NCBI RefSeq assembly: GCF_033153115.1
Contig: NW_026889751.1
Location: 2,108,001 to 2,172,000, forward strand
DNA length: 64,000 nucleotides
Direction of reading: 5' to 3'
Origin: Saccostrea echinata
Lineage: Eukaryota
Part shown: positions 14,135 through 45,050 of the stretch, in pieces
How positions within the stretch are numbered: the first letter of the stretch is position 1
How the letters are laid out: each line of letters opens with the position of its first letter
The notes under the pieces: generated by a model
What the model saw: the letters and a program-made list of their open reading frames with translations, nothing else
Told to the model about the DNA's origin: nothing
The model's database searches: none
Position numbers and translations under genes: made by a program

Positions 14135-17100
14135 CTATGCTTGCTGACACGCGTTTTGAGTACAGCTTGCCTAAAAATAAAATTGTACACAAGTTTAATA
14201 AAATTATACATACTGCTATTATGGCTGACGTAGTTTTAAAATATGTCATTTTTACAGTATTTAAGATTCAAATACCAGCATATTCGACTTAAAATTGTTA
14301 CTCTATCTGAGGAAAACAAATCTTTTATCCATAAGTACTTACAATTCCATTATTTCTGATACAAACACATTCATTTCCACAATTGTCAATTGTTATCTTG
14401 GAGCCCAGAGGTATAAACTGATTGAATGCATCGCATCCTATGAGAAATTAAAAAGAAATTACAATATACAATTTATTTTTCTTACAGTATATGCCATGTT
14501 GTAAATTTTTAATCAACCAAGTGGCAGTGAATACAAAACATTGTCATGATGTAAATGTTATGAATTCCATCAATTTTTTTTGTATAACGGTAATAAAATA
14601 GGTATTATGGGAATTGATTATCAATGGTTTAAATCATACTTAACCGGAAGGTCTCAGGATGTGGGGATGTTCTTTCAAAGGGAGAGGGAATTACTTGTGG
14701 TGTACCCCAAGGGCGCAGGTTGGGTCCTTTATTGTTTTAATGTTATGTAAATGATATGTTAATTAGTATATGAAGACGCTTATCCTATATGCAAATGACA
14801 GTGCCATCTTGTACTCAAATAGAGACCCAAATGTGATCTAAGATAAAATTGGTAAGGTGTTACGGAGGTGTTCTGAGTAGCTCATACACAAGCTCTACCT
14901 TCATCTTGGAAAAACAGAGTCTGTTCTATTCGGCCATACCCGCAAGCTAAATAATGAAAGTCAGCTTGAGGTCAAATGTCACAATCAAAATTCTAGGAAG
15001 TATTTCAAAACAAAAGAGTAAGTTTCTTTAAAAATCTGAACCCTAAAACTACATGCAGTATTAATTGCGATATCTTAAATTCAACAAACACACTCTGTGT
15101 ATAGCTGATCGAGTTACCCATAGCCTGACACCAAATTACTAACAGGAGCTCTTTGACAGAAATGATAATACTAATAAGGATGCATCTAATTTTAAGTTAA
15201 TAGAGTCAGGGCTTTACAAACAACAGTTCAAATTTTATCGCCATGTTCTTTTACACTGGAATACTCTGCCTTTGGGAGTTAAAAATAAAGCTAACACAGC
15301 TACACAAAGTAGCTCAAGAAGCTCGAAGGAGGGAAGGAGGTATTTACCGGTATATAGATGTATAACATTTTATGATGTAATAATACAGATTTTTGTATTA
15401 ATTAAAAAAAAAAAATAAACAATGGCTATTACTTCAGGTTAGGAAAAATATCTGATAATCATTTTTATTTATTTATTTTTTTTTTTGGACCGCTTAGTCA
15501 TATGTAATTACATGTAATCAATCAACATGTTACAACCCAGAACCCATTGAAAATAAGCAAGTTTTAAATATTGCTTTAATGGGATATCATAGGCAAAGAT
15601 AGATTAAATTATTATGATTTGCATTATATGTTAAAAGGCCTGGCTCCGGGGCCATAAAACTAAGACAAGCTCACTTTTGATTTCAGTCTAACTCCTACGA
15701 AAGGAATTAATGGTGGAAAAGTGAGACTGAGATCAAAACTGGGCTCGTCTAAGTTTTATGGCCCCGGAGCCTGGAACCCGTTTTACAAAAGAACTTACGA
15801 CTAAGACCAAAAACTTAAGATGATTGTAAAATCTTGCACAATTAATGATTATATTACAAATTGCCTGCATAAATATATCTACTAAATTCTTTTTGAAAAG
15901 ATTTAAACCATTTTCATAAAAAAGAAAGTTATTTGTAAAATTATTGTTTGGTCTAAGTCGTAAGTTTAGTTGTAAAACAGGGCCCTGGTTTCTGTGATAT
16001 GCATCCGTTTAAATAATAATGATAGTTATAGACTGTGATTTTATCTGGTGTGCCAAAAATACATGTACAATCCCACTATTAATATTGTTGATTTAATTTA
16101 ATGTTTAGCAAGTTATTTCATGCTCTGCCTGAATAAAGATAATAACAATAGTCACCCGGTAAATTCAGAATTTACAACGTGATACATAAACATGAAGCTC
16201 GCTTTAAAATACTAGTAGATGAATAGTAGATGAATAATATGCCTTATACACATTGTGAGAAGTTAATACTGGTTAGGTTCGGTACCTGGTTGACACTGGC
16301 ACGTGATTGAATCTGCCCAATCAGGACAGAGGAAATTTCTGTTGTATGTACACTGGTTCCCAGTCCGACAGTCATCACTACAAGACAGAAAAATATAATT
16401 GAAATTCAATGCAGTATTTGTTTTGTACGCTTGTCATATATACATTCACATTTATAGTCACTATCATAGTATTTACCTGGTCTTGCAAGGCTGAGTTTCA
16501 TTTGCTACAATTACTGGAGGAAGTGTCGTTCCTTGGACCATAAAATTCAAAGTTCCATTCCTGTTACTTTGAGGTTCCGATGATAAGACAACATTTCCCC
16601 TTGAAGTTTCAATAATTGTATTACCATTTGGATCGACACGTCTTGAAACAGCACCATTTCTGATCAGAGAACCAGCTGAGGGTGACCTTACTCCGACATT
16701 GTTAGTAGTTGCTACTCTTGTTTGGAATCCAGAACCTCTAGATGCCGCTTCGCCAAATGTTTCGAAAACCGAGCTCTGGGGGTCCTGTGGTGTTCCAGAT
16801 GAGGTTCCTACATCCATACTTACAAAGCCACCCACTCTAGTATTCTGTCGTGAATTCCTTGAAAGTCCATTATTTTCAAATCTAGACCCCTGCACACTCT
16901 GAATTGAACTTCCAGAGTTTGATGGCATAAATCGTGTTTGTATTGAACTAGAATCCGAGGCAGCGTCAGTATTGGAAGGAAAACTACTACTAGAAAGATT
17001 GTTTTGAGCTGGCGCAGTTCTGACCACTCCTCCTCTAGTTTGAGGAAAAGAGGCAGGATCAAATCCAGTTATCGACGGCTGGCTGTTAAAGGCTCCATTA

Positions 17101-20100
17101 TTTTCAGGAGGAAAACTTGAGGAAAATCGTCTTTCTATTGATCCTGGATTAACTATAGCGTTAGAGTTGGGGTTGAAAATGCTACCAGATGGTATGTTTT
17201 GGTTTTGTAAAGGTCTGGAAGCATTTTCAGATTGTGACATAGGAACAGGAACAGATCTTGTCATTGTAATCCGGTTATTAAAGTTATCAGTAGAGCTCAC
17301 ACCTCTTTCAAATATGTTTGAATTACCAGTATTCCCAGTAAAAACATTTGAGGAAAATCGCCTTTCTGTTGAATTAGGATCCACAACAGTATTACTATTA
17401 AAGGACAAACTGCCTGCAGAGGGCATGTTTTGACTTTGGATACCTCTAAACACAGCTCCCCCAGTTTGTGTGTTAGATGCAGGATCAAATCCTGTCCTTA
17501 TGAACTGGTTGTTAACATTAGAGGTACCTGTAGGTCTTACAAATGGGTTGGATGTTCCCAAATTTCTGGAAAGAACACTTGAAAACATTCTGGGGTTTTG
17601 AACATCCATGGTTTGTGGTCCTCTTGTGGAATCTGCAGAGTTTGAAAAGGAAACAAATCTATTTCTATTTATTGCAGCTTCGCCCCCAAGCAGAGGATTT
17701 ACATTTGCATTTAAATTGGTGCTCATTCCATTTATTCCGTTGTTTAGATTGGCAAAAACACCAGAGTTAGAAGTATCTGGTACTCGGGTATTGTTAATTT
17801 GTGACAAATTATTTGTGTCGGCTTCATTAGAATTGGAGATAACTCTCCTGACGGTTGTGGTCTTTTTTATGAATCTTCTAGTGCTTGAACTGCCAGATGT
17901 GAGTGCGCTGTTTTCTGTTCTAGATCTTTCCATATTTGCCTGGGTCTCTGATGACATGCCGTCACGGATTATATTCGGATCTGTCATACCTGTTTTTATT
18001 GGATCCGAAACATCAGCATTTCTACCTGTTGCTGCTTCGTTGGTGGTTTGGAATCCTTGTGAAATAGTAGGTTGCCGCGAAAATCCTGTGACTTGTGCCG
18101 TTGTTCTTTCACGAATTCTGTTTGGGTCCCTTGTATCGGTTGTGCCTTGTTCCAGAACGTTTACATTTCCATTTAGCTCTCTGTTGACGCCCTGGAATCT
18201 TTGAATTCCAGGGGTTTGCTGCGAGCTCATCACAGAATTATCGCTTCTAGTAGAATCAAAAGAGACCGTTGGTGAATTGTTATCAATACCAACCTCTGGC
18301 TGGTTGTTTGGAAAATTGAAATTGACATTTACTCCAGGTTGATTACTTGCTGTTGCGAAGTTTGAATTGAAATTAGCTCCTGGTTGGTTATTGGTGCCCA
18401 TTGTTGCAGAGGCTTCTTGGAAAGTTGTTTCATCCTCATTATTGTTACCGTCAACAAACATAATTTTGCTTCCTCTTTGAGAATTGTCTACAGGGTTCTG
18501 AATTCTGTTGTTTGGTTGTCTTCTGGAAATGTTTGTTACAGGGTCTGTTCTAACATCAAATCTTTCGCTTATCGAATTAATTGGAGTTGCTGTTGATCTT
18601 ACTGTAGATAGAGTATTTTCAAAATCTGAACGTTGGAGATTAACAGACTGGGGCTGCACGTCTACGGAAGTTCGGATGAATTTATTCATATCTACCTTAG
18701 ATCCTACTATATTGCTATTTCCATTTATTACTATATTGGACTTGTTTTTAACCTCTGAAACCGAGGTTGATGGACGACTTATTTGCCTGTTGTCTATGCT
18801 GTTTCCATTTTGTGAAATTGCAGTGGCAGCCTGATTTCTGTTTGGATCTGTTACCACTGACGGTATGAATCGTTGACTTAAAGGATCGATACCCCTGTTT
18901 GTACTAGATTGAATTTCTGTAATGGTTGTACGAGAACTTGTGTTTGGGTCGTTGGTACTTCGACTGAATATTGAATTAGAAGGGATTGTCATTCTTTCAT
19001 TTGATGTCCGAGATACTGTACTTATGTCACTTGGTCCGGGAAATCTATATAGAATATCATTTGGATCGATCTGGCCTTCATTAGCTCTTATGAAGTTTCT
19101 AAAGTCCATATTTAGTTCATCTGAGGGTGATGTGACCTGTGAAGTTTTTCTGGTGTCATCAATTCGATTAATAGTTGTTGCTGTATTAACTCTTACTATC
19201 CTCGTTTCATCGTTTCTCCCAGAAGGATCAGTAAATATTTGTCTGCTATTGCTTACAGACACCCCAGTCCTAGAACCAACAGAAGGAGTCTGAATGTTAA
19301 CAGTTGGTGACCCTCCATTGCCAATAGCATTGTCTTGTGCCGTATTAGAGAACTGGGTTGGTGTAAACATTTGCTGAAGTTCACTCAGAGAAGGAATCCT
19401 TTCTCCAGTGTTTTCGACAGACACTGCCTGACGTTGTATAAGGTTACTTGGAGATGCATCATTGGAAACACCACTGGAAAGCACTATTCGATTTGGTGAA
19501 TTGTCTGTAGCCGTACCAGTGATCCTACTGGAGCTCGGGTCGGCGTTCGAATTTCCAAAGACTGTATTTAGAATTGCACTGGCATCAAAAGTTTGTGGAT
19601 TTGCACTTGTTACAGAATCAAACGAATTAAGTTGTCCATTTACAGTCATTTGTGATGATGCGCCATCATTGGAGTTGCTATTACTAAAGCGTGAAACGAA
19701 TGAAGACTCGGCAGCAGATGCTGGATTTACTCCTTCCGGTACTCCTGCATCGGAGGTTATTAAACCTGTTGCTAGGCCATTTGCTATCGAGGTTGCGGTG
19801 CCTCCTAGTAATGTATCCTGACCAGTCAATGTCGTAATTAAATTTTGACCCTCTAAAGTGTTGGCGGACTCACCCAAAGTAATTAATCCTCCATCGAAAC
19901 CTGATTGACCCACGATGCTTGCCGTATCAGTCGTTGCGGGTAATGTTTGAACGGTATTTGAGAATCCGCTTAAATCAAAAGTGGTAGGCACCGTTTCACC
20001 ACTCAGGGTAATGCTTCCAGTTCCCCCGTCAGCTAAAGTTGTTACAGGGGGAGAAATGATAGGGAGGGGTGGCGGTCCTGGAATGCCGGGAAACCCGAGA

Positions 20101-20276
20101 GGGGCAGGTAAAAGAGTACGCACACCTGGAGGAGGTGGTCCGAATCCTGGAAACAAAGGTGGAGGTCTACCAAAACCACGGAATCCAAACGGAGTAAATC
20201 CTTGTTCAACGGAGGATTTAATGAACAAGAGTGAAAGTACGAAAAGGAGATTCCAACCAGTTTTTAGACATTCCAT
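14135..20276 (-). CDS. Cluster gene A: secreted ~1340 aa Asn/Ser/Thr/Arg/Phe-rich low-complexity protein with C-terminal 12-Cys module
   Basis: Exons 20276-16477, 16377-16286, 14437-14343, 14170-14135 (phases 2,1,0; all GT-AG). Signal-like N-terminus MECLKTGWNLLFVLSLLFIKSS. C-terminus: CKTSDDCRTGNQCTYNRNFLCPDWADSITCQCQPGCDAFNQFIPLGSKITIDNCGNECVCIRNNGIASCTQNACQQA*. Confidence 0.92.
14600..15290 (+). mobile_element. Decayed non-LTR retrotransposon (LINE, CR1/L2-like) reverse transcriptase fragment in intron 2 of gene A
   Basis: Conceptual translation with stops and frameshifts: MGIDYQWFKSYLTGRSQ...ITCGVPQGRRLGPLLF*CYVNDM...LYANDSAILYS...LHLGKTESVLFG...HWNTLP, matching the RT motifs GVPQGSxLGPLLF, YADD and the downstream WNxLP. 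Confidence 0.85.
15643..15770. mobile_element. MITE 1 (CTG TSD) in intron 2 of gene A
   Basis: TIR GCTCCGGGGCCATAAAACT / AGTTTTATGGCCCCGGAGC, flanked by CTG on both sides. Confidence 0.8.
15774..15984. mobile_element. MITE 2 (CTG TSD) abutting MITE 1
   Basis: TIR GAACCCGTTTTACAA..AACTTACGACTAAGACCAAA / TTTGGTCTAAGTCGTAAGTT..TTGTAAAACAGGGCC, flanked by CTG. Confidence 0.78.
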
Positions 20277-22107: not shown

Positions 22108-23977
22108 TTATTTCTTTCCAGAAAGATCCGGACATGCTCGCATCGTACAGGCAGCCTGAAAAAGGGAAAAAAAAGTCATGTACAGATCGGACATAAATCG
22201 CCGTCATCTGTCGGGGCCATGAGACACTACCACTCATAATCTTATAGTTCCCAGGTCCAGAGCACTAAACAGTAATTCCTTTATGAGTTAATTGTTAAGT
22301 TATAGCCAAATATCTAGATCCTGGACCTAGTTTGTGGCTGGTAACAACAAGAATAAACCAGGAACCAGGTTTGTATTGGCATCTTTCCCTAGATTCGCTG
22401 TGTCATTGCGCAACAAATCATGAATGATACCATCTGAGGCTTTCATCTTTAATAAAGACTCACATGTACTGTATACTGTTTAACCTGTACCGACCAACTA
22501 ACGAACTTCGGAGAAAAGAGACGAAAGATTCGTAACAGAAATAAATTACATGTATCTAATAACCTACCTCCCCTGACTGACTGTTGTTACATGTACAAAC
22601 ATTCCCACACTGGTCAATCTGCCGAGACTGTCCGAATGGAATAAAAGTGTTCTGTGCCCGGCAACCTATTTGTAAAAGAGTTAATTTTACAATTTTTTTA
22701 CACTGAAAATAGAAAATATAAAACATTGCAAAGGAAGACAACATGTATTTAGCAAATAAAATATTATTTTTATCAAACATATAGGATATAATCTTACCTG
22801 CAACACACTGACATCTTAACATAGGAATCCATTTTGGACACATGTACTGGGCCTGCGTGGCAATAGTTGGAGTAAAGGCACATTGTTGACCAGCTGGACA
22901 ATCCCTGATAAAACGTTTTTTATGATTAATACTAGTATTTGTAAATGGAATATTAACATGGTATATAAATGTATTAAACCTAAATATGACTTAGAATGTA
23001 ACATTTACTTACGTTTGGTGACATTGTGCCTGATTTCCTTGGCCCCCAGGGACCAGAGAGGGTTGTAATTGACCAGGGAATCCCCCGGGTTGTCCCGGAA
23101 ATCCTTGTTGATTTGGTAATCCTGGTTGTCCTCCTGGAAATCCGTTTAGTGGAGGTTGTCCGGCATTAAATCCCTGTTGTCCAGCATTGAAAGCCGGGGG
23201 TTGTCCGAAACCTGGGGGACCACCATTGAATCCACCCTGTACACCATTAAATCCTGGTCGTGGAAATCCCTGTTGTCCATTGAATCCTGTTGGCATATTA
23301 GGTTGACCGTTAAAATTTGGAGGCCCATTAAATCCAGCCTGTCCATTGAATCCAGGCTGTCCGTTGAATCCTGGTAGATTATTAAAGCCTGCTTGTCCAT
23401 TAAATCCCATCCCTGGTTGTCCATTAGGTCCTGGTTGACCATTGAAGGCAGGTTGTCCATTAAAGCCGCCCTGTCCCATAAAACCTGCTTGTCCAGGAAC
23501 GCGTCCTTGTGGTCCAAACTGCGGCGGGAATCCCTGATTCATGGGACCAGGGATACCCTGAGTAGGTGGAAACCCATTAACTCCAAGTTGCATTCCACTG
23601 GGGAACCCTGGTTGACCTTGAGTTAAGCCGGTAGTTTGGGATGGGATACCAGTGTTTTGTAAAGAAGTTGTGCCGCCAATTGTAGGAAAACCTCCTTGAA
23701 TCGTTCCGGTTCCGGTAGCTGGATTTGTTTGGACAGTTCCGGTCTGTGTTCCCACTGTATTTGTTGTAGAGGCGGTTAATCCTGTATTCACAGGTTGTAA
23801 TCCAGGATTCAGAGTCGAATCAGTACCTTGAGCATTGCTGCTTCCGAAATTCTGTGTGGGAAACGAAAATAAGTCCAAACCAGTGCCTGTGTTCGGGGTA
23901 AGATTAAGCGTGTTCCCTTGGCCGAACACTACACCAACAAAACAACACAAAATCCACCCAATTCGTAACTTCATCAT
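22108..23977 (-). CDS. Cluster gene B: secreted ~405 aa Gly/Gln/Pro/Phe/Asn (GFNGQP-repeat) protein with C-terminal 12-Cys module
   Basis: Exons 23977-23013, 22904-22798, 22665-22568, 22155-22108 (phases 2,1,0). Signal MMKLRIGWILCCFVGVVFG. C-terminus: CHQTDCPAGQQCAFTPTIATQAQYMCPKWIPMLRCQCVAGCRAQNTFIPFGQSRQIDQCGNVCTCNNSQSGEAACTMRACPDLSGKK*. AATAAA on the minus strand near 21995. Confidence 0.93.
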
Positions 23978-27244: not shown

Positions 27245-30200
27245 ATGGATATTTTAAAAATTCTTTTTGTGACTGTAATGTTATCTTGTGTTTGTGACGG
27301 AACTTATTTCTTCAAACCCAAGAAAATATTTTTGCCTCCGATTGAAAAACATCATCATCACCATCATCATCATCATATTCATCCCCATCCTCACCCTCCT
27401 CATCCTCACCCTCCTAAGCATCCTCCTCATTCCCACTTTCCTCACAATCATCATCACCCTCACGGAATGGAGGACCACGGATTTTTCCATAAATTTCACA
27501 AGCCAAAATTCATCCATCACAGAATTCGTCCACTTCCAAAGCCAGTGATGTACAAGACTTTCCTTATTCGGAAATACAGCTTGCCACCAGATTTTCATGT
27601 GCATATTTCGTTGAATAAGAAAATATACGGACACTCTCATGGACCTTTTAAACCACACACCCATTATCCGAAAAATCCTACGTTGATGATGCACCAAAGT
27701 AAAATGAAGAAAATATATCGACCGAAACAATTTCCACACAAATATGGACAATATCCTGTGAAAAACATTTTGACATACGGAACTAGAGGAAAAGTTCCAC
27801 GATTTCCGGAATCGGGTATGCAGATACAAACCAATATGTTTCTTCCCACAGGAATTCTACATCCACCTACCACCAGGCCCTCAAAGAAGCCAAGAATAAG
27901 TAAATATGAACTATGGCTGAGGAAAATTAATGATTGGATGATAAGAAAACAGAATACCGCGAAGGGAATTCCTGTAAAAATAAAGCGCAAACGGATTTTT
28001 AATAAAATACATACGAATATTCCTAATCCACCTCAACGACTAAACATTCCTGAACCTCGGCCACGTAAAAAAGATGATGGTATTATTGCTAATTTTGTGT
28101 TTGTGAAACCACCTTTTATCAGTAAGAGTGAGGATCCAGTAGGTCAGGGGATCCCCGTTTCTGAAAAGCCTAAGCCTTCAACAACTAACAAAAAAAGGAT
28201 TACTCCAAAGCCAGAAACCGTTAAGTTGCGCCCTAAAGCCCCAGTTATGGGCATTCCTATTAGCCTGGATAATATAGGCCCACCATTTGATATTACTGAA
28301 GTTAATGATCTTCCTACGGGTGGCCTACCCCCACCTATTGAAATTATTCATGAACCAATCCCTGGTAGTACCGGCGGTGTCAATAAAGTCGATGTAGGGC
28401 TTCCTATAGGTTTGACTCCAGGACCATTTGGGTCAGATTCTGTCACACCACCCAGTATTATAGTGGATGGCCTCCCAACTGAACAGAATGTGAATAGCAT
28501 TGTTCCGCTTCCCGGAAACATTAACGAAATGTTGACGGATGTAGCTGATTTGTCTGAATTTCCAAATTTAGACCTCAGTAATGAGCCATTGATAATTGAA
28601 CCTTTTGGTCCAATGCCACCTGATAGTCAGTCTCCCCTGCCGCTGGACATACAACCTTTTCCATGGGACCCCTCTCAGATACCCTTCCCACCGGAAGTAA
28701 TTCCTCGTATATCAAATAAGGAAAAGGAGCCATATGTTATGAGACCACTGGAACCTATTGTTAAGATAATTGGCCGAGATAGCATAAAACGTAAAAACGA
28801 CACTATATTTGTACCTAAACCAATATCTGATCCAAAATATAACGAAACAGAACAGGTCAATGAATCGCCTTACAGTGTATTTACTGAGGGTCCAGTGGAA
28901 CCTTCAACACAAACAACAAAAACAACAATGCCGTCGATTCCTTTACATAGAATTAAAGGTGATCCTAGTGCAACAGCAGTCTTCACAACACAAAAACCAT
29001 CAGTAACTTACCAAACAACAACAATGACCCTACCTCCTTTATCAATTATGGAGTTAAGAGATTTTGAACACCCAACTTCTGCTACGGATGTCACAACACA
29101 GACAACAACAACAGAATTAGAAACAACATCGACAACAATGACAACTAACAGTATTCCGTCAACAGACCCTGCAATCATTGTGAATAGAACAACTGGCGAC
29201 GGTCAGAATAATATGGATATGGTAGATCAAAAAATAGGAAAAGAACAGAAGAATGAATCAGCCTTCTTTAAGTATAGACCTCAGGAAATAAACATATCAT
29301 TTCCCTACCTAATATTTGATAATCCAACGACTACTACATCAGCATCAAAGACTCCAAAATCTGACACTGTAACAAGAACTAGTACAGTGACCACAACAAC
29401 AGTGGCAACAACACTAATTACAAAAACAACTACTATGGATACGGAAATAGTAACTTTAAAGACGAATGCTAGCATGCCTCAATCAACAACAAACCTGTAT
29501 AAGGATACACCACGTGTGCCAACATTAACGACAACAATACCTGCACCTGTGGCTGTTGACCAGATAAATGAGGAAATAATTTTGGATTTTATGACAAATA
29601 AACAGCTTATATCGTCAAGATCCGACGTTGCGATTGATGACTCAACTCCAGATAAAGAAACAACAACGCAAGTAAGTAGTACATCAAAAATAGGCGAATC
29701 TACAATCATATGGCCCACAACGATGAAAGAAACAACACCGACAACAACAACAACAACTAATGCATTACCTAATACAACAACACGAATCCTAACAAGTCTG
29801 AAACCAAGCACAAAAACTGAGACAACTGAGACTCCAGAACTAGCGGAGGTTATTATGGCATCTTCAACAGCACAGCCACTAACAACAGCAAAAACAACAA
29901 CAACAATACTAAATACACCTGAAACAACAGGCATACCGACAACTACAGATAATTACTATTCACACACAGAGACCCCGGTGTATGACTATGTTACAGGCCC
30001 TTACGACTGGTTTTTCAACGAGACAGATAATACCACGTATTTATATTATGATGAGTTTATGAACATGACAACACACCAAACAACTGAAGTAGTCCTGGAA
30101 AGCACAACATCACCAACAACTGAAAGACCAGTAACTCCAACAATGAAAACAACACAAACGACACCAATATTGGTTTCTTCCGGATTTTTATCAAGTAACA

Positions 30201-31825
30201 AACCTACCACAGCAATGATGGATTTTAGAAGCACAAAGCAGACAACACTTAAACCATCAACCCAAACAACAGAGCCGGTGTACACCTCGACACTAATTTC
30301 TACCGAACAGGCAACAACTACAACTACACAGCCACCTGAACAGACATCATTAAGAGAAGATAAAACAACAACTCCAGTAGTAGTAACAACAACCTCCCCA
30401 ACAGTGACAAGCACCCAGAAACCTCCTGTCACTACGGCAACTCCAGCTTCAACTACAACCGAGGGACTAAAAATCTGCCAAGAAACGTAATAAAGATTAT
30501 AATAAATCATCATGTATTCATAGACATTTTTTTTTAAAATTTAAACATTCTATTATGTTCCTTTTTAAACATTTAAAAAATATATATTTTGCAGATATTG
30601 TAAAATCGGTCAGGAATGTACCGAAAACAATACATGGCTGTGTCCCACTGATGTAGCCGGAACTAACTGCCACTGTACCCAGGGCTGTAGAGTAGGAAAC
30701 ATGTTTATTCCGCTTGGCGAATCCTATCACTTAGACGAATGTGGAAGTGTGTGTTCTTGCTTCAACCTTTATGGAAAGGTATATGAATGTATTGTTTTTA
30801 TCTTTCGAATTACATTTTAAAAAGATTGAAGGTAGGCTAGTCATTTTATTGTGGAGCATTAGCTGTATTTTGTGTTTTTATCATTGATTAAATATTTGAA
30901 TGTTTTTTTTTTTGCTCTCTACCTCAAGGCTGAGTGCCACAGACTCCGATGCACTAACAGAACTGTAGCAGATCCTGTAAAGAAGCAGACAAACTACACC
31001 GGCATATCTATAGGCGGTGTGATATACATTCCTGTACAACGGGTCCAAATCCCGAAAAATAAGTCGAACACTCCTGGTGATGACGAATATACGTATGGGA
31101 TTTCGATTGGTGGCGTGATTTACATACCAAAAAGAAATCATACGAACTCTGAACTCGATAAAAATAACGACTGGACGTCGGGAATATCACTAGGTGGGGT
31201 CATCTATGTACCCTCCCGCGAATACACAAATGAACAAAATGGCAAAACTGATTATGAAAATGTGGTTGAAGGCAATTCCTCTTGGACAAAAGGAATAACT
31301 ATTGGGGGCATTATATATGTTCCAGTGCACAAAAGAAAAAAGACCTTTCAAGAAAAGAATCGAGAATTTGAAAAGATATATGACAAGACAAATTTTGCTG
31401 ATGCCGATGTTATACCTGTTAAAACACCATATGGAACCACAAGGGGAATAACTATTGGAGGTGTTATTTACATACCGAACAAAAACAATAACGAGCCTGT
31501 CCATTTTCTTGGTGAAAGCGAAATACAACGTAAAGAGGAGAAAAACCAGACCTCGCCCATAGAAGTGGAATATCCGGTGGGCTGGACAAATGGCATATCA
31601 ATCGGGGGAATCATTTACGTGCCCGTCCGACAACGCAAGAAGGTTGTACACAACCCTACTTATCAAATACCAGACATTCAAACCAAAAACTACACTAAAA
31701 ATGACTTTCCTTATTTGACCAAAACGGCTGGAATTCATATTGGAGGTATAATTAATGTTCCGATTGCGAAAAGATCGTCTATAAAATCTATAAAAATAAA
31801 AAAGATGAACCCGGCTTTTGGATAA
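27245..31825 (+). CDS. Cluster gene C: secreted ~1440 aa His/Lys/Pro-rich, Thr-mucin-like protein with 12-Cys module and GISIGGVIYIP-repeat tail
   Basis: Exons 27245-30486, 30595-30778, 30929-31825 (phases 2,0). Signal MDILKILFVTVMLSCVCDG. Module: CQETYCKIGQECTENNTWLCPTDVAGTNCHCTQGCRVGNMFIPLGESYHLDECGSVCSCFNLYGKAECHRLRC, followed by a ~290 aa tail. AATAAA near 31975. Confidence 0.93.
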
Positions 31826-33775: not shown

Positions 33776-34018
33776 GGGCCAACTTTAAAATAATGTTTGT
33801 TTGCCCTCTCCCGACTCAGGATGAAAAAATTGGGTCGGTAGGTAGGTGACAAATTTTTTCCCCCCAGAAAATTTCAACATCAATGCTGAATTTTCAAAAT
33901 CTATTTTCCGGAATGCATAAAAAAATTGCTTCCTGGAGGTTAAAAAAGTTTAAGTCGGGCCGTTTTTAGCCAGTCGGTCGGGAGAGGGCAACCAAACATT
34001 TTTTTTTTAAGATGGCCT
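33776..34018. mobile_element. MITE
   Basis: TIR GGCCAACTTTAAAATAATGTTTGTTTGCCCTCTCCCGAC / GTCGGGAGAGGGCAACCAAACATTTTTTTTTAAGATGGCC. Confidence 0.72.
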
Positions 34019-34853: not shown

Positions 34854-35886
34854 AAACAAGATATGTTTGTGAAACACTGATGCCCCCTTATGGCAACTTA
34901 TAGCGAAGGTTTAACTTTCTCAAATGCAAATCAAATATGCTGGTACCCAAAGTAAAGGTCTTGTACCGAGGAATATACCTGTGAAATGTGAAAGCCCTAG
35001 CAGCAACCATTGAAAAGATATGGAAAAGGTTAAAGTTTTTCAAAAGTAAGTCAAACATCAAGGTCAAGGTCAAATGGTCAAAATTAATGGTGCCCAAGGA
35101 AAGGCCTTCTCAAAATAAATATACATGTGAAATATGAAAGCCCTAGCAATGACCGTTTAAAAGATATGGCCAAGGTTAAAGTTTTTCAAAAGTAGGTCAA
35201 ACTCCAAGGTCAATGGGCTATAATTGTTGGTATCTAAAGGAAGAACTTGTCACAAGAATTACACATGTGAAAAATGAAAGCCCTTGCACCAACTGTTCAA
35301 AAGTTGTGGCCAAGGTTAAAGTTTTCCAAAAGTAGGTCAAACTCCAAGGTGAAGGTCAAAGGGTCAAAAGTGTTGGTATCCAAAGGAAGGTCTTGTTACA
35401 AGGATTACATATATGAAGAATGAAAGCCCTAGCACCAACTGTTCAAAAGTTATGGCTAAGATTAAAGTTTTCCAAAGGTAGGTCAAAGGGTCAAAGTTGT
35501 TGTTATCCAAATTAAGGTCTTGTCACAAGGATTACATATGTGAAAAATGAAAGCCCTAGCACCTACCGTTCAAAATATATGGCTAATGTTAAAGTTTTTC
35601 AAAAGTTGGTCAAACTCGTAGGTAAAGGTTAAAGGGTCAAAGTTGTTGGTATCCAAAGAAAGGTCTTGTCACAAGGATTACACATGTGAAGTATGAAAGC
35701 CCTAGCACCAGCCGTTCAAAAGTTATGGCCAATGTTAAAGTTTTACAAAAGTACGTCAAACTCCAAGGTCAAGGGGTCAAAGTTGTTGGTATCCAAAGCA
35801 AGGTCTTGTCACAAGGATTACATATGCTAAGTATGAAAGCCTTAGCACCAACCGTTCAAAAGTTATGGCCAATGTTAAAGTTTTTC

Positions 35887-35917
<31 letters not shown>

Positions 35918-36243
35918 AGGTCAAATATGGTGGTACCCAAAGAAAGGTCTTGTCACAAGGAATAAACAGCCCTAGTACCAATCGTTCAAATGTTATGGCC
36001 AAGGTTAAAGTGGAAAAATTTTGCAAAGCTGGGTCAAACTCCAAGGTCAAGGTAAAAAGGTCAAATATGGTGGTACCCGAAGAAAGGTCTTGTCACAAAG
36101 AATACACATGTGAAATATGAAAGCCATAGCTCCAACCAATCAAAAGTTATGGGCAATGTTAAAGTTTTTGCGGACAGACAGACAGACGGACGGACAGGGC
36201 AAAAACTATAAACTCCCGAATCTTCGATACGGGGGCATAAAAA
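34854..36243 (+). repeat. Helentron-type non-autonomous element (HINE-like) carrying ~9 tandem satellite units of ~127-154 bp
   Basis: The AAAGCCCTAG marker recurs at 34991, 35137, 35277, 35423, 35550, 35696, 35836, ~35966 and 36120. The 5' ATGCCCC and 3' GGGGCAT form sub-terminal inverted repeats; a GACA/GACG microsatellite and the hairpin CCCG...CGGG lie at the 3' end. This matches the layout known for oyster satellite-bearing Helentron elements. Confidence 0.85.
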
Positions 36244-37525
36244 GTCTTCAATTAATTTATCTTGACCTAACAAAATCCTTTGAATTCTTATAATGATTAC
36301 AAATTTACTATATAATACACTGTATGTTTCAATTAATATTATATGAGAATTAAGAGTAGTCCACTCTAACTGCATTAAAATACCACAATATTATAGAGTT
36401 CTTTGGTGTACAATATATATAGAGAATTCTACAGAAAAACAAAATTTAACATGTGCCAATTCTATAAATATTGCAAAATGTACAAAACTTAGATTTGTTT
36501 TATTTCAAAGATTTTCAATCGTTATTTAGTTCGAAAATCAATTATTTACGTATCGACCTTGAACCTTGAGATATGATCTGCAGACACAGACGCTGGAAAG
36601 ACGTAGGTATGTTTTTAATTTTTTTTTTAAAATCCAAATCTCTTTTGACCAAACAGCAGTTTTATGTTTCCATTCTGAAAGATTTTACATTTTGATTAAA
36701 ATAACATTCGCAGGTTTGTTAGTAATGACTGCACCAGTCCTGTGCTTAATGCATACTTTTTACAGTGATTTTGATTCAAATTAAAGATTTTCAAACTTAT
36801 TACATCTTGAATTAAGTTTTAAAATGTATCACGTGATTTATAGCTCCTAACAATTGAGGAATTTGGAACATAATCATTGATAAAATAGTAAGTAGTTTAT
36901 AACCAAGTGATGGTCCTCATTCACGAGAATACGCAAATACCTGTCACTGAGAGATAAGACTATTCCTTGCCAAATACTTGCGTATCAAAATTATATTACC
37001 GATGAAGAAAAAAAAGTGTCTATTAAACGTTAGATTTCGAAAAGTAAAAATGAATTGTATTGGTTCAATACATTGAACTCTTACAATATCTTCTGATAAA
37101 AGATAATAATCCTAATCCTTTTTTTATCATTTATCGCATACCTAGCATTCTAAGTTAATGGTCATCATGACTCATTATTTCATTTTGTCATTGATAATGG
37201 TCACATTCTATAATATATTGTCACCTTTTATTGCTGTGCACGAGTAATGCAACCGTTCTTGCTTAATTGATCCACGGTCCACTGGTCAACGTGCGTTGTC
37301 CTGACTGTCCACTAAACGATGCAAATACGTCATGGGTCTTTAGGGTCAGTTCTAGTATTAAAAATCCATTAAATGATTGTATTAGTATCCTGTGAATGAC
37401 AAAACTTGTGAGTTTCATTCATGAGGAAATGTTTCCATTCATGAAAGATAGTGGTTCAATGACGTGTGCTTCCTGGAGGTGTCAAATGCGTAAACATACC
37501 GTAAACATGTGTAGTTTGTCTTGGA

Positions 37526-37532
37526 TATAAAA
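37526..37532 (+). promoter_or_regulatory. Candidate TATA box of gene D
   Basis: TATAAAA about 115 bp upstream of the ATG at 37642; weak evidence given the AT-rich background. Confidence 0.4.
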
Positions 37533-37641
37533 GAAGACAATACTTAAAAGCAGGCATAATTGAGTAAGAATAACAACTACATTCATCGTATCATTTAACC
37601 TTATAACCTTTAGGATAAGCTATTTATTACTAAAAAGAACC

Positions 37642-39086
37642 ATGCAATTTCTAATCCTATTTCTCTTCTTTCTACAAATTGCCAGCGGAGTTATATTTCC
37701 TATTCGTCGCCCTGTTCGGGTCAGAGGTGATATAACGATGAGAAGGCCCCGGTTTCTACGATTTCCAATGAGATTTATTCCACTAGTCGGCAGAGTTTTC
37801 AGGAGCAGACGACTAATGCCAAACTCACATATTCACATACCACTCAATGGAAGACAATTCGAACACTCTCATGGCTTCAGTGATGTTGGTCATTCACATG
37901 ACACAGGGTTTCCTTCGGGGGTCTACCCTGAAAACGGAGTCGGATGGAATGTGCCAGATGAATGGAGAGATGCCAACACCTGGTCAATGTTTGATAAGGT
38001 CAATCCAGATTCTGTTCTTGTACGCAATAATGACCTTCCGATCAGTACACCAGACTTCGCTGGTCCCAGCGTCCCACTATTTCCTGATAACATCATACCA
38101 TCTGATGTTGAGGTCCCAATGGTTACATCAGAATTTCTACCAACTTCCGACAAACGAGAAGAACCCGTGGTTACAAGACCATTAACTCCTATAACAGATA
38201 AAATTGATGGTTCCTCACTACCAGGTATTTTTGTGAATAGAGATAATATTAATTCGACTGACACGAACAGAACTCAAGGGAATATAGAAAATAATACCAA
38301 CACAGACCTGGTCCAAGGTTCCAATACAACAACTGAAACGAAGGGACATGAGAGTACAAAGACCAATGAACCATCCTGTCATAAAACGTAAGTAGATAAG
38401 AAAAGTGTCATGACTATTTTTATAATGATTTCAAATTTTTCAATTAAGTATAAACTTAGTATCACTTAATTTCACATATTAACTTGAAATTTTACAGCAT
38501 AATTGATCACCTTTTACCACAACTTTCTTTCTTTATAGGGGTTGCATGACAGGTCACGAATGTGTCTTTTCTGGTTCCCACATTTGTCCCATATACATAC
38601 CGGAAGTCGACTGCAAGTGCAGAGCAGGTTGCAGAGTTGACTATACATTTATACCATACGGCACAACCGTCACCATGGATTCATGTGGAAACACATGCTC
38701 TTGTTTTAATATGTATGGAGCAGTAAGTATATTATTTGTTTCTCTGGGCTCAAAGAAGTATCCTCAATATATTGTACATCATACAGTATCATTTTGTTAC
38801 ATTATCGTGAAAATAACTACATTTATTTCTCTTTATTTCACAGCCAACCTGTTCAAATATATCTTGCAAAGCTAACTCCCAGAAATTATTACCTTCTGGT
38901 CCAACTATCACACCAAAAGAAAACGACATTTTACCAGCCAACATTTCAACACCACAGAATCCGTTACCGACTCCGGTCAACTTGGACGTCACCACGAAAG
39001 CTAAGCTGGAAAATAGCAAAAGAAAGGACAGCATCCTAATGAATTTCCCAGTGATTCCGATTGTCAGAGATACTCAGAAAAGTTAA
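37642..39086 (+). CDS. Cluster gene D: secreted ~390 aa Arg/His-rich then acidic Pro-rich protein with 12-Cys module and short tail
   Basis: Exons 37642-38387, 38539-38722, 38844-39086 (phases 2,0). Signal MQFLILFLFFLQIASG. Module: CHKTGCMTGHECVFSGSHICPIYIPEVDCKCRAGCRVDYTFIPYGTTVTMDSCGNTCSCFNMYGAPTCSNISC, then KANSQKLLPSGPTIT...DTQKS*. AATAAA near 39192. Confidence 0.93.
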
Positions 39087-41998: not shown

Positions 41999-42918
41999 AT
42001 GGCAGTACTTACGACAATGAGCATTCTTTTGCTGTGTTGTTTGTTATGTTTTGTGTATGTCGATTCATTTCTCTATGCTTCTGTTCCTTGGACTGTAATA
42101 ATTTTCGATGACATCGAAAACGATGCATCTGGGAACTATTACACGCCGTTCATGGAAAATCGACCCTTGGGGCCAGTGAACAACAGGAGGAGGAGACCCC
42201 CACCTCCTGTAGGCAACTTGAGACCCCCGATTCCCATGGGCAACTTGAGACCTCTGCAAAGGATGGCTCCAAACAATATGAACATTCCCAGACGGGAAGC
42301 GGTTACACCCGTAAATACTGTCAAGTACATCTCTCCATACCCTAGGTAATAATGATTTCAGTAACAGATATGGTTAGATAGTCCTTAATTCTTTTTGCTT
42401 TGTGTTTTTCGTAAATTGATGAAACATTTGGTACATCACTTTTTCAGTACACCTTATTGTCCTGTTGGACAACAGTACGTTTATTTGCCGCCCACTCTGG
42501 ATGGTGATGCTGTAGCGTCGATCTGTCCCCTGAACAATCCTGTGCATCCCTTATGTAGATGCCAAACAGGTGCGAGATTTTATAGATATTTATTTATGAT
42601 TGGAAACTTAAAGTTCATCAATATTTACCAATCAATTTATCTCTTCCGATTTTATAAATATTCTTTTACAAATTCTTTGCATCAATTTGTCTTCTCCTTG
42701 CAGGGTGTCGACATAAAAACTTCTTTATCCCCTATGGCACGTCAATAATGGTTGATAAATGTGGAAACAAATGCTACTGTAATAGCTTAAATGGAGAGGT
42801 AGGCTTTCATTAGGCCCCAATATTTATCATAAATCAACTGAAAATCAAAGAGATTATATATATGTGTTAATTGTTCTTTTACGTCTTGCAGGTGGAATGC
42901 GAATTCGACAGTTGTTAA
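41999..42918 (+). CDS. Cluster gene E: secreted ~196 aa Pro/Arg-rich protein with a 10-Cys variant of the module
   Basis: Exons 41999-42345, 42448-42569, 42704-42798, 42892-42918 (phases 2,1,0). Signal MAVLTTMSILLLCCLLCFVYVDS. Module: YPSTPYCPVGQQYVYLPPTLDGDAVASICPLNNPVHPLCRCQTGCRHKNFFIPYGTSIMVDKCGNKCYCNSLNGEVECEFDSC*. AATAAA near 43090. Confidence 0.92.
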
Positions 42919-43964: not shown

Positions 43965-45050
43965 ATGAAGTTAGAAATAATTGTTTGCCTTTTGTGTTTA
44001 TTATCTTTAACACATGCTTACTCTTACAAAAGGAGAAAAAATTGTGTGAAACGACCTTTGCCATATCCTCCGACTTATCATTACTACAGACCAAGGTTTC
44101 CTCCAATGCCATTCCCAAGATGGCCCCAGTGGAACGTGCCCGCTCCAACTCCTGTGGCCATGAAGTTTTTTGAGGTTGGAGGACAACCTGCGCCACCAAA
44201 CACTGACCAGATCCTACCTTTGTTTCCCCAGCCCCAGCCGCCAATTGACGTCAAACCTGTCATCCCGGATAACTCCGGACCCGTGATCGTAAATCCGGTG
44301 AATCCGATTATAGAAGATTCCGGACCCCTTCGTGGAGATCTTGCTCCTGCTCGTGATATTGTACCACCTGCACTGAATGGTAAACCTTGCAATGCCATGT
44401 GAGTAATAGGAAGTATTTTAGGTTTACTCTTTGGTGTGTTTTACAACAGTTCTCCATTATACCAGGAAGAATGATTTATAAATAGGTTTTTTTTTTGATT
44501 TCTTTTGTTCAGGAGTAATAATTGTGCCATGGGAGAAGTTTGTATGTATATTGACCAGTCAGTAGGAAATAGCTTTGTTTGTCCCTCGGCGACTGCAGTG
44601 TCATGTACTTGCCAACCAGGTAAAATTCTAACTGATACACTGTCTCCATTCTCTGCTTAACACTTGTCCCATTCCTCCCACACAAAAAAAATTCCTATTC
44701 TAACAGATTAGCCTAATTCCGAGCACTCTGTCTTAAATTCTTAACCTCTAACAATTAACTCCTCTAAATTTGCACGTAAGTAGATACATTAATAACGATC
44801 ACTTCGTGGCGTTATACAGGGTGTCGGCATGGGGACCTATTTATTTCACTCGGTAATACGGTGTTGGTGGATCAGTGCGGAAGCAAATGTTCTTGTATGT
44901 CGTTGTATGGAACAGTAAGTTAATCATCTAGTCATTGTTCTGTGCATAATCGCTTTCCCGATTCCCAAAGTTAATATTTCTAAATTGTGGTGTTTATTTA
45001 CAATCTCTCTATTTTATTTACAGGTCAGCTGTGACAAAAAAGCTTGTTAG
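43965..45050 (+). CDS. Cluster gene F: secreted ~220 aa Pro-rich protein with 12-Cys module
   Basis: Exons 43965-44398, 44513-44619, 44820-44914, 45024-45050 (phases 2,1,0). Signal MKLEIIVCLLCLLSLTHA. Module: CNAMSNNCAMGEVCMYIDQSVGNSFVCPSATAVSCTCQPGCRHGDLFISLGNTVLVDQCGSKCSCMSLYGTVSCDKKAC*. AATAAA near 45143. Confidence 0.93.

What the first reader, a model, noticed from the sequence alone, without database searches (positions are those of the whole stretch)
14135..45050. Hidden six-gene cluster of modular secreted proteins: variable low-complexity exon plus a shared spliced 12-Cys module
Seen in sequence: six ORFs that look unrelated each end at a phase-2 GT donor, in five of them just after a Cys (CKT, CHQT, CQET, CHKT, CNAM). 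Following the splice sites gives the same cysteine module in all six, with invariant x17 spacing between C7 and C8 and a GC-x5-FI[PS]xG-x5-DxCG core. Each begins with a signal peptide, while exon 1 ranges from ~115 to ~1270 aa with very different chemistry. Inference: a lineage-expanded family in which a conserved disulfide domain (assembly, cross-linking or protease-protection handle) carries exchangeable disordered arms, as in mollusc shell-matrix, periostracum, cement/byssal or mucus proteins. I do not recognise it as a named family.
Basis: partly seen in the sequence, partly recalled or inferred. Interest (0 to 1): 0.92.

Follow-up and report, generated by a model that had tools for sequence, protein, structure and literature searches.

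The report
Bivalve gene cluster sharing 12-cysteine module
Six neighbouring oyster genes each join a very different low-complexity "arm" to the same small 12-cysteine domain; the splicing is real and the family is found across bivalves, but it is a distant, unnamed relative of the von Willebrand C / fibronectin-finger type of domain and its job is still unknown.

Summary
The window is Saccostrea echinata DNA. It carries six tandem genes, each with a large low-complexity exon ending at a phase-2 GT donor, followed by 2-3 small exons. Together these encode one module: C1-x3/4-C2-xxGxx-C3...C4P...C5xC6xxGC7-x17-C8GxxC9xC10...C11-x4-C12.

- **Gene models.** All six spliced models are open frames. 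Transcript contigs from four runs cross the two modelled junctions of gene 4 and the three of gene 5 exactly. Gene 4 and gene 6 equal NCBI proteins XP_061169055.1 and XP_061196770.1.
- **Family.** A profile search of 1.84 billion proteins found only 28 relatives. Every named one is a bivalve protein (oysters, scallops, mussels, pearl oyster, unionid, mactrid) and nearly all are "uncharacterized".
- **Fold.** No Pfam model reaches threshold. The C-terminal half gives weak TILa, pacifastin and VWC hits, and its predicted fold resembles a VWC subdomain-1 or fibronectin type I finger.

It is an unnamed family of apparently secreted modular proteins, but it is old and bivalve-wide. The arms are conserved by paralog type rather than freely exchangeable, and no shell or adhesive role was shown. 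Gene 4's observed transcripts splice past its predicted start codon and signal peptide.

Verdict: new variant of a known kind, moderate interest.

The parts
14135..20276 (-). Gene 1 (1340 aa): exon 1 20276-16477 (signal-like N-terminus, 1239-aa S/N/T/G-rich arm, C1), exon 2 16377-16286, exon 3 14437-14343, terminal exon 14170-14135 (carries C11-x4-C12, then stop).
   Evidence: The model is identical to NCBI XP_061195266.1 (P0012, 'mucin-17-like') up to residue 1329. The NCBI model then skips the terminal exon and runs into the neighbouring gene. Junctions were not tested with reads.
22108..23977 (-). Gene 2 (405 aa): exon 1 23977-23013 (G/P/Q/N-rich arm), exon 2 22904-22798, exon 3 22665-22568, exon 4 22155-22108.
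   Evidence: Its module is closest to the Mizuhopecten protein P0011 (58%) and to M. coruscus P0014, both of which also have Q/G/P-rich arms.
27245..31825 (+). Gene 3 (1440 aa): exon 1 27245-30486 (His/Pro block, then T/P-rich mucin-like arm), fused module exon 30595-30778, last exon 30929-31825 (C11-x4-C12, then a tail of repeats around a G-I-S-I-G-G-V-I-Y-I-P motif).
   Evidence: The module exon matches g4's at E 8.9e-12. Folding the tail alone gave pLDDT 34, which is uninformative.
37428..37563 (+). Upstream 5' exon of gene 4. The donor GA|GT at 37563/37564 is firm; the 5' end is uncertain. It has an in-frame TAA at 37502-37504 and no in-frame ATG after it.
   Evidence: In some searches, the 30 loose letters before 37686 in runs X1 and X3 equal window 37534-37563. 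One search found the donor.
37642..39086 (+). Gene 4 (390 aa as annotated): exon 1 37642-38387 (observed transcripts enter at acceptor 37684-85|37686), fused module exon 38539-38722, last exon 38844-39086.
   Evidence: The model equals XP_061169055.1 exactly. Both junctions are crossed by contigs of four runs.
41999..42918 (+). Gene 5 (196 aa): exons 41999-42345, 42448-42569, 42704-42798, 42892-42918. It lacks both C1 and C3 (C3 is Tyr).
   Evidence: All three junctions are crossed by a contig of run X2. The orthologs K1QNY2 and XP_034315060.1 in Crassostrea show the same double loss.
43965..45050 (+). Gene 6 (220 aa): exons 43965-44398, 44513-44619, 44820-44914, 45024-45050. Pro-rich arm containing an RGD.
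   Evidence: The model equals XP_061196770.1 (P0054). The AlphaFold2 model gives helix 2-22, a disordered arm, and an all-beta module at 140-220 with pLDDT 76-92.

Best explanation
This is a tandem cluster of six paralogous genes of a bivalve-restricted, so far unnamed protein family.

Architecture:
- a hydrophobic, signal-peptide-like N-terminus;
- a Cys-free, intrinsically disordered arm whose composition is specific to each paralog type (S/N/T-rich, G/P/Q-rich, His plus mucin-like T/P-rich, His-motif, Pro/Arg-rich);
- an approximately 85-residue, 12-Cys, all-beta domain at or near the C-terminus.

The domain has two lobes. The N-lobe (C1-C6) is a small disulfide knot. The C-lobe (C7-C12) is a finger of the VWC subdomain-1 / TILa / fibronectin type I / pacifastin kind.

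Shown here: the gene structures, the splicing of g4 and g5, family membership, restriction to bivalves at this sensitivity, and the predicted fold class.

Inferred: the proteins are secreted. The conserved domain is a common docking or binding handle, as such fingers are in VWC and FnI proteins. It would tie chemically different disordered arms to one shared extracellular partner or material, such as matrix, mucus or another secreted biomaterial. The cluster arose by ancient tandem duplication with in-place divergence of the arms, not by recent exon shuffling.
For: - Gene models and phases.
- Spliced transcript contigs for g4 and g5.
- Identity of the models to NCBI proteins.
- Only the window's exons match in the 923-Mb genome.
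- 28 relatives among 1.84e9 representatives, and all named ones are bivalve proteins.
- The 12-Cys pattern is conserved across 20 members.
- Sub-threshold Pfam hits fall only on the C-lobe: TILa in 6 of 20 members, Pacifastin_I in 5 of 20 (best E 9e-4), VWC2L_C in 3 of 20, VWC in 1 of 20.
- The AF2 module has pLDDT 76-92 and is all-beta.
- Fold matches are weak but agree. Foldseek gives FnI pairs at E 0.08, collagen IIA VWC at rmsd 1.9 over 40 aa, and pacifastin at TM 0.57-0.61. VIA gives NELL2 VWC at Z 4.0 and FnI at Z 3-3.7 for residues 178-220.
- The ESM Atlas lead points to VWC, CCN and NELL.
- Arms are Cys-free and paralog-specific.
- Arm homology: g4 to Pinctada at E 1e-16, g3 to g4 at E 1e-4.
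- No two Saccostrea paralogs pair in the tree.
- Members with near-consecutive accessions on one contig in Mytilus and Argopecten suggest a conserved cluster.
Against: - No expression or proteomic data tie any member to a secreted material.
- Signal peptides were judged by eye only.
- The g4 transcripts seen in three samples bypass the annotated ATG and signal peptide.
- All fold and Pfam similarities are below the usual significance thresholds.
- The module's disulfide map is not known.
- The homodimer prediction gave no answer.
- The tree of the short module is unresolved, so the age of individual duplications rests mostly on arm similarity.
Confidence: 0.55

Rival explanations
1. The C-lobe is a pacifastin-like canonical serine-protease inhibitor. 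The C11-(T)-x-x-x-C12 loop would be the reactive site. The arms would tether the inhibitor in a matrix, or protect that matrix from proteases.
For: - Pacifastin_I is the second most frequent weak Pfam hit: 5 of 20 members, best E 9e-4, covering profile positions 5-37 of 40.
- Foldseek aligns 32 residues to pacifastin inhibitors at TM 0.57-0.61.
- The C-x4-C loop often starts with Thr and is hypervariable. The residues at the would-be P1 position are Q, M, R, N, F and K in g1-g6. Such variation is typical of inhibitor loops; that generalisation is my own knowledge.
Against: - All hits are below the gathering score (19.4 against 27.9 bits).
- C7-C8 spacing is 17, against 9-12 in pacifastin. The second gap is G-N-x, not N-x (consensus recalled from memory).
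- VWC and FnI fingers share the same C-x4-C feature.
- The extra six-Cys N-lobe has no counterpart in pacifastin.
- No paper surfaced in the one text search made for pacifastin together with bivalve; its 3 hits were not read.
Confidence: 0.15
2. The module is a chordin/CCN/VWC2-like growth-factor binding domain. The proteins would then be extracellular regulators of BMP/TGF-beta-type signalling rather than structural components.
For: - VWC, VWC2L_C and TILa are the weak sequence matches.
- NELL2 VWC is the best VIA match at Z 4.0.
- The ESM Atlas neighbours are VWC2L-like, WISP3/CCN and NELL2, at score 0.76 (a lead only).
- UniProt labels two M. coruscus members 'VWFC domain-containing'.
Against: - Only subdomain 1 is matched, at profile positions 1-39 of 57.
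- The CC-x2-C part of VWC is absent, and the motif is C-x3-C-x-C rather than C-x2-C-x-C.
- Long mucin-like, Q/G-rich or His-rich arms and a six-gene tandem cluster are unusual for signalling regulators. This is inference.
Confidence: 0.15
3. The proteins are immune or stress effectors analogous to the arthropod single-VWC (SVWC/Vago-type) proteins, induced by infection or nutrition.
For: There is one VWC-like domain per protein and the family is invertebrate-only. A shell-proteome paper discusses VWC proteins of C. gigas in an immune context (PMC5854119).
Against: SVWC proteins are short, 8-Cys, and lack long arms (my knowledge of Sheldon et al. 2007, not tested here). No expression data under challenge were examined.
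Confidence: 0.08
4. The shared module is an artefact of over-reading short ORFs and chance splice sites.
For: Only g4 and g5 have read support. g1's NCBI model uses a different 3' end.
Against: - Exact junction support from contigs.
- Exact identity of the models to NCBI proteins.
- Profile E-values down to 1e-27 in other bivalves.
- A conserved Cys pattern across 20 members.
Confidence: 0.01

Closest known systems
VWC / chordin-like cysteine-rich repeat (Pfam PF00093), with its relatives TILa (PF12714) and VWC2L_C (PF23331)
   Same: The C-lobe shares the pattern C...[FY]xxG....C..CxC...G...C-x4-C with VWC subdomain 1. It gives weak HMM hits. It superposes on collagen IIA VWC at rmsd 1.9 A over 40 residues and on NELL2 VWC at Z 4.0.
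   Different: - Scores are below the gathering thresholds.
- Only profile positions 1-39 of 57 are covered.
- Subdomain 2, with its CC-x2-C motif, is absent.
- The spacing is C-x3-C-x-C.
- An extra six-Cys N-lobe precedes it.
- C1 sits in the arm exon.
Fibronectin type I (finger) modules
   Same: These are the best structural matches for residues 178-220 of the g6 model (VIA Z 3.0-3.7, rmsd about 2.9 A over 40-43 residues). The two-lobed module also aligns loosely to FnI pairs (Foldseek E 0.08-1).
   Different: There is no sequence similarity. FnI has 4 Cys per module. The Z-scores lie in the range where small disulfide-rich folds match by general arrangement only.
Pacifastin-type serine protease inhibitors (PF05375)
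   Same: A six-Cys unit ending in C-T-x3-C, with weak HMM hits (best E 9e-4) and TM 0.57-0.61 over 32 residues.
   Different: - The first loop is longer (17 residues against 9-12).
- The gap is G-N-x rather than N-x.
- The unit is embedded in a larger 12-Cys domain.
- Pacifastin is known from arthropods.
- Inhibitory activity is untested.
Mollusc shell-matrix and biomaterial proteins that pair low-complexity regions with small Cys-rich domains
   Same: The general architecture is the same: signal peptide, low-complexity arm (G/Q-rich, His-rich or mucin-like) and a Cys-rich domain.
   Different: No member was found in any shell, byssus or cement paper searched. No tissue evidence was found.

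Membership tests
VWC (PF00093) | The protein reaches Pfam's gathering score for the VWC model. | tested here: not met
   The best hit was 16.5 bits against a cutoff of 27.6, in 1 of 20 members, covering profile positions 1-39 of 57. There was no hit for the window's own g3, g4 or g6.
VWC (PF00093) | Ten Cys with a C-x2-C-x-C motif in subdomain 1 and a CC-x2-C motif in subdomain 2 (consensus from my knowledge of the family). | tested here: not met
   The alignment shows C8-G-N-x-C9-x-C10 (x3 spacing) and no CC-x2-C. Several members end right at C12.
VWC / FnI finger fold | A small two-sheet, disulfide-stapled beta finger. | tested here: inconclusive
   The AF2 module has pLDDT 76-92. Foldseek gives rmsd 1.9 A over 40 residues to 5nir but at E 2.2. 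VIA gives Z 3-4. All are below the level that proves kinship.
TILa (PF12714) | The protein reaches the gathering score. | tested here: not met
   The best hit was 16.8 bits against 27, in 6 of 20 members. g3's module scored 13.4 bits.
Pacifastin_I (PF05375) | The protein reaches the gathering score and has the six-Cys spacing C-x(9-12)-C-N-x-C-x-C-x(2-3)-G-x(3-6)-C-T-x3-C. | tested here: not met
   The best hit was 19.4 bits against 27.9. C7-C8 spacing is 17 and the next gap is G-N-x. The C-T-x3-C ending is present in many members.
Pacifastin_I (PF05375) | Inhibits serine proteases through the C5-C6 loop. | not testable with these tools
   This needs a biochemical assay.
IGFBP N-terminal / CCN | A GCGCCxxC motif and a Pfam IGFBP hit. 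| tested here: not met
   The motif is absent from the alignment and there was no Pfam hit. Only VIA Z 2.1 for the N-lobe and an ESM Atlas lead at 0.76 point this way.
EGF-like | A six-Cys EGF fold or an EGF HMM hit. | tested here: not met
   No Pfam EGF hit was found. UniProt's 'EGF-like' label on A0A8B6E496 is most simply explained by a PROSITE-type pattern falling on C9-x-C10-x5-G-x2-C11. That reading is mine.
Secreted protein (classical signal peptide) | An N-terminal signal peptide present in the translated mRNA. | tested here: inconclusive
   All six ORFs have hydrophobic N-termini, and the g6 model has a helix at 2-22. No signal-peptide predictor was available. The g4 transcripts bypass the ATG.
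Mollusc shell-matrix / adhesive proteins | Detected in a shell, periostracum, cement or byssus proteome, or expressed specifically in the secreting tissue. | not tested
   Accession-based text searches found nothing.

The most novel reading that the evidence does not exclude
The approximately 85-residue 12-Cys unit is a new, bivalve-specific domain family: a VWC-SD1/FnI-like finger fused to a private six-Cys N-lobe. It would serve as the common docking or cross-linking handle of an ancient tandem cluster, conserved since before oysters, scallops, mussels and unionids split. Each paralog would bring a different disordered chemistry (His/metal-binding, Q/G elastomer-like, mucin-like, Pro/Arg-rich) into one extracellular bivalve material. 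Alternatively, the C-lobe would be the first pacifastin-like inhibitor scaffold outside arthropods.
Probability: 0.25. Interest if true: 0.65.

Novelty: new variant of a known kind. Interest (0 to 1): 0.45.

Why it matters
If the module is a common docking domain, the cluster gives a compact and evolutionarily old toolkit for studying how bivalves assemble extracellular materials from disordered proteins. It also gives a defined approximately 85-residue domain to express, map for disulfides and test for binding, protease inhibition or metal-dependent assembly. In practical terms, it shows that NCBI's g1 model ('mucin-17-like', 1799 aa) is probably a fusion that drops the family's conserved last exon. 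It also shows that g4's annotated start codon is not in the transcripts sampled so far.

Tried and rejected
- **Fragment alignments.** MAFFT alignments that mixed exon-2 and exon-3 fragments with the fused g3/g4 exons misplaced the C-x-C motifs (A1 and A2). They were dropped in favour of A3 (checked with hmmbuild).
- **PDB sequence search.** The A3 profile against PDB sequences gave only chance hits (ERCC-8, E 0.35).
- **Word-indexed search.** The search for homologous proteins with the g6 module found only the S. cucullata ortholog. That search cannot see this divergent family.
- **Homodimer prediction.** Complex prediction on the g6 module gave 'no answer' (score 0.00, controls not run). This is no evidence either way.
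- **Gene 3 tail.** AF2 of the repeat tail without an alignment gave pLDDT 34, which is uninformative.
- **Tree.** The tree of the 85-column module is unresolved, with 13 of 18 forks open. It was used only to note that no two Saccostrea paralogs pair.
- **Literature.** Searches by accession and by topic found no description of the family.
- After that, only coordinates and references were used.
- **Joined models.** The joined spliced models were translated only inside local scripts, to check frames, compare with database proteins and build a local alignment and tree. No search tool was given joined letters. Searches used single exons by reference or proteins returned by tools.
Full report
**1. 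What is in the sequence**

The window is eukaryotic, 30-42% GC. It lies at C2:2108001-2172000 of a 923-Mb assembly. Exact identity of one gene product to XP_061169055.1 identifies the organism as the oyster Saccostrea echinata.

Between 14135 and 45050 there are six large ORFs:
- g1: 20276-16473, minus strand
- g2: 23977-23009, minus strand
- g3: 27206/27245-30490, plus strand
- g4: 37642-38391, plus strand
- g5: 41999-42349, plus strand
- g6: 43848/43965-44402, plus strand

Reading the DNA at their ends shows a GT donor two bases into a codon in every case: AG|GTAAAT, AC|GTAAGT, AC|GTAATA, AC|GTAAGT, AG|GTAATA and AT|GTGAGT. In five genes the donor follows C-K-T, C-H-Q-T, C-Q-E-T, C-H-K-T or C-N-A-M.

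Downstream stop-free segments preceded by pyrimidine tracts and AG complete the split codon and continue into the same cysteine pattern in all six genes:

C1-x3/4-C2-xxGxx-C3-...-C4-P-...-C5-x-C6-xxG-C7-x5-F-I-[PS]-x-G-x5-D-x-C8-G-xx-C9-x-C10-...-G-xxx-C11-x4-C12

C7 and C8 are exactly 17 residues apart in all six.

The introns sit at identical positions, with phases 2, 1 and 0. g3 and g4 lack the middle one. g5 lacks both C1 and C3.

Translating the spliced models in a local script gives one open frame per gene: 1340, 405, 1440, 390, 196 and 220 aa. The joined sequences were used only inside local scripts. No search tool was given joined letters.

**2. Is it real and more than chance?**

Yes, for four reasons.
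- A six-frame search of the whole genome with the fused g4 module exon found only the window's own exons at E below 1. One of these, a g1 exon-2 match, reached only E 0.27. Two chance-level hits at E 1.2 lay elsewhere.
- Contigs of four public runs (two studies, three samples) lie on g4. They skip exactly 38387->38539 and 38722->38844, both GT..AG.
- One run also skips 42345->42448, 42569->42704 and 42798->42892 in g5. These are the five junctions I had modelled beforehand.
- My g4 and g6 models are letter-for-letter XP_061169055.1 and XP_061196770.1.

g1 equals XP_061195266.1 ('mucin-17-like', 1799 aa) up to residue 1329. The NCBI model then skips the small terminal exon 14170-14135, which carries C11-x4-C12 plus a stop. 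It continues into the neighbouring gene, whose ORF is at 2406-3107.

**3. An unexpected point about g4**

The transcript contigs do not contain ATG 37642. In X1, X2 and X3 they enter the big exon at 37686 (acceptor AG at 37684-85), carrying 20-136 loose 5' letters. The 30 letters shown equal window 37534-37563, which ends at a GA|GTAAGA donor. No contig of any run covers 37600-37685; the depth in that bin is fully accounted for by the part from 37686 onward.

In frame, the upstream exon has a TAA at 37502-37504 and no ATG after it. The first in-frame ATG of this isoform is therefore at 37738, which lacks a hydrophobic leader. The pyrimidine tract of this acceptor is exactly what encodes 'FLILFLFFL'.

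Either a signal-peptide-encoding isoform is made from another acceptor or promoter in tissues not sampled, or g4 is not secreted in the sampled tissues. This remains unexplained. The other five N-termini are hydrophobic in the usual way, but no predictor was available.

**4. The family**

A profile of the module (A3, 61 positions, all kept) was searched with HMMER against 1.84 billion representative proteins. It gave only 28 hits at E<=1e-3.

Every hit that carries a name is from a bivalve:
- Saccostrea echinata and S. cucullata
- Crassostrea/Magallana gigas and C. angulata (K1QNY2 is the g5 ortholog)
- Mizuhopecten, Argopecten and Ylistrum
- five Mytilus species
- Pinctada imbricata
- Sinanodonta woodiana
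- Mactra antiquata

All are 'uncharacterized' or 'hypothetical', except for automatic UniProt labels: 'VWFC domain-containing' twice and 'EGF-like' once.

Several unnamed hits are unspliced ORFs. They start and stop at the same exon borders as here: P0002, P0004, P0017, P0019, P0021, P0023, P0024, P0026 and P0028. The intron positions therefore appear conserved beyond this species.

An alignment of 20 members keeps the Cys framework. The Crassostrea g5 orthologs share the joint absence of C1 and C3. This supports the idea that C1 and C3 are disulfide partners.

**5. Age and the arms**

The module is too short for a resolved tree; 13 of 18 forks are open. However, no two Saccostrea paralogs pair. 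The nearest sequences are cross-species: g2 to Mizuhopecten P0011 at 58%, g4 to Ylistrum P0006 at 60%, and g5 to C. gigas.

The arms are Cys-free (one Cys in g6) and differ strongly in composition:
- g1: S/N/T/G-rich
- g2: G25, P15, Q13, N11 (percent)
- g3: T17, P13, with a His/Pro block
- g4: mixed, with a His motif
- g5 and g6: Pro/Arg-rich

They are nevertheless conserved by type. The g4 arm matches the Pinctada P0018 arm at E 1.4e-16. The g3 and g4 arms share a short His-containing segment at E 1e-4. The g2, g3 and g1 compositions recur in the following scallop and mussel members:
- g2: P0011 and P0014
- g3: P0027
- g1: P0016 and P0055

Members in Mytilus and Argopecten have near-consecutive accessions on one contig or chromosome. 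This suggests the tandem arrangement is also old, though that is an inference.

Two structural facts also argue against exon shuffling. C1 is encoded in the arm exon, and the phases are 2/1/0 rather than a symmetric cassette.

Taken together, this points to ancient tandem duplication with in-place divergence of the arms. It does not fit a recent lineage expansion or freely exchangeable arms.

**6. What the module resembles**

No Pfam family reaches its gathering score. The only recurrent weak hits all fall on the C-terminal half:
- TILa: 6 of 20 members, best 16.8 bits against 27
- Pacifastin_I: 5 of 20, best 19.4 against 27.9, E 9e-4
- VWC2L_C: 3 of 20
- VWC: 1 of 20, 16.5 against 27.6, profile positions 1-39 of 57

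PDB sequences give nothing.

AlphaFold2 with the 20-row alignment models g6 as a leader helix, a disordered arm, and an all-beta module at residues 140-220 with pLDDT 76-92.

Foldseek against the PDB finds no hit at E<=0.001. Its best rows are:
- fibronectin type I module pairs (E 0.08-1)
- mucin and VWF TIL/E regions
- collagen IIA VWC (rmsd 1.9 A over 40 residues)
- pacifastin inhibitors (TM 0.57-0.61 over 32 residues)

VIA-align against 48,161 chains gives NELL2 VWC at Z 4.0, and FnI fingers at Z 3.0-3.7 for residues 178-220. For the N-lobe it gives only Z 2.1-2.3 to IGFBP-N and knottin-like toxins.

The ESM Atlas neighbours are VWC2L-like, CCN/WISP3 and NELL2 at 0.76, which is a lead only.

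The consistent reading is as follows. The C-lobe (C7-C12) is a finger of the VWC-subdomain-1 / TILa / FnI / pacifastin kind. The N-lobe (C1-C6) has no recognisable relative. The 12-Cys unit as a whole is not a member of any named family. It fails the defining tests for VWC: no subdomain 2, no CC-x2-C, and x3 instead of x2 spacing. It also fails those for pacifastin, because of loop lengths.

**7. How it probably works**

Shown: a bivalve-restricted family of modular proteins with a conserved, confidently folded, disulfide-rich C-terminal domain and paralog-specific disordered arms. At least g4 and g5 are transcribed and spliced.

Inferred: secretion, and a role for the module as a binding or docking handle. 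VWC and FnI fingers typically bind extended partners such as growth factors, collagen, fibrin or disordered peptides. That would place different arm chemistries into one extracellular context. I put about 0.55 on this overall statement. Of that, the structural part is near certain and the functional part is about even odds.

Rivals:
- a pacifastin-like protease inhibitor, with a hypervariable C11-x4-C12 loop and Q/M/R/N/F/K at the would-be P1 position (0.15)
- a chordin/CCN-like growth-factor binder (0.15)
- an SVWC-like immune factor (0.08)
- an artefact (0.01)

Nothing found here links the genes to shell, periostracum, cement or byssus. Accession and topic searches found no paper describing the family.

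The runs holding g4 are coded. By year and organism pattern they probably correspond to a pooled larvae-plus-adult transcriptome (PMC6201952) and a visceral-ganglion/gonad study (PMC12564202). If so, g4 is not mantle-specific. This is an inference, not a result.

**8. Not done or not possible**

- The homodimer prediction gave no answer.
- The g3 tail fold was uninformative.
- The N run at 12973-13118 was left untouched.

**9. Verdict**

However, it overstates how hidden, lineage-specific and shell-related the cluster is.

Novelty: a new variant of a known kind, namely a VWC/FnI-type finger with a private N-lobe, forming an uncharacterised bivalve family.

Interest: moderate (0.45).

Noticed in passing
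window 37428-37686: The g4 transcripts in three samples join an upstream exon (donor at 37563) to an acceptor at 37686, inside the predicted signal-peptide codons. This removes the annotated ATG at 37642. The upstream exon has a short uORF (ATG 37507 to TAA 37528-30) and an in-frame TAA at 37502.
   Followed up: partly
window 14135-14170 and 2406-3107 (minus strand): NCBI model XP_061195266.1 ('mucin-17-like', 1799 aa) appears to be a chimera. It drops g1's conserved terminal C11-x4-C12 exon and continues into a neighbouring gene about 11 kb downstream that encodes a Ser/Lys/Glu-rich protein.
   Followed up: partly
window 30929-31825: The g3 tail carries about eight spaced copies of a hydrophobic G-I-S-I-G-G-V-I-Y-I-P-type motif. 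Each is predicted as a short beta strand. Folding the tail alone gave pLDDT 34, so no structure can be claimed.
   Followed up: partly
window 37830-37900 (g4 arm) and 27500-27650 (g3 arm): A His-containing motif (H-x-H-I-x-L-N-G-x-Q-F-E-H-S-H-x-F-x-D-x-x-H-S-H-D in g4) is conserved in the Pinctada homolog and partly in g3. g3 also has a run of nine His followed by His-Pro repeats. This is a possible metal-binding segment.
   Followed up: partly
window 44330-44340 (g6), 37723-37731 (g4); Mytilus P0008/P0033, P0027: RGD tripeptides occur in g4 and g6. The g6 context, G-P-L-R-G-D, recurs in Mytilus members, there on the C-terminal side of the module. This may be a cell-adhesion motif or may be chance.
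   Followed up: no
window 34933-36169: A tandem repeat of about 146 bp in about 8.8 copies (77% matches) lies between g3 and g4. Its units translate to repeated 'MKALAPTVQKLW...' ORFs, so it is probably a satellite or transposon remnant.
   Followed up: no
window 6819-7105 and 10334-10578: Two arrays of 21/42/84-bp tandem repeats are reverse complements of each other. They form an inverted pair about 3.2 kb apart, downstream of g1.
   Followed up: no
Pinctada imbricata KAK3091606.1 (P0018): This 522-aa model contains a g4-type arm ending in C-H-K-T, then a Pro-rich g6-like arm, and only then a module. It is probably two neighbouring family genes fused by the annotation.
   Followed up: no
window 49479-53836 (minus strand): Two long ORFs (491 and 918 aa) encode a Ser/Arg/Glu-rich protein with a coiled-coil-like C-terminus. 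It is an unrelated flanking gene.
   Followed up: no
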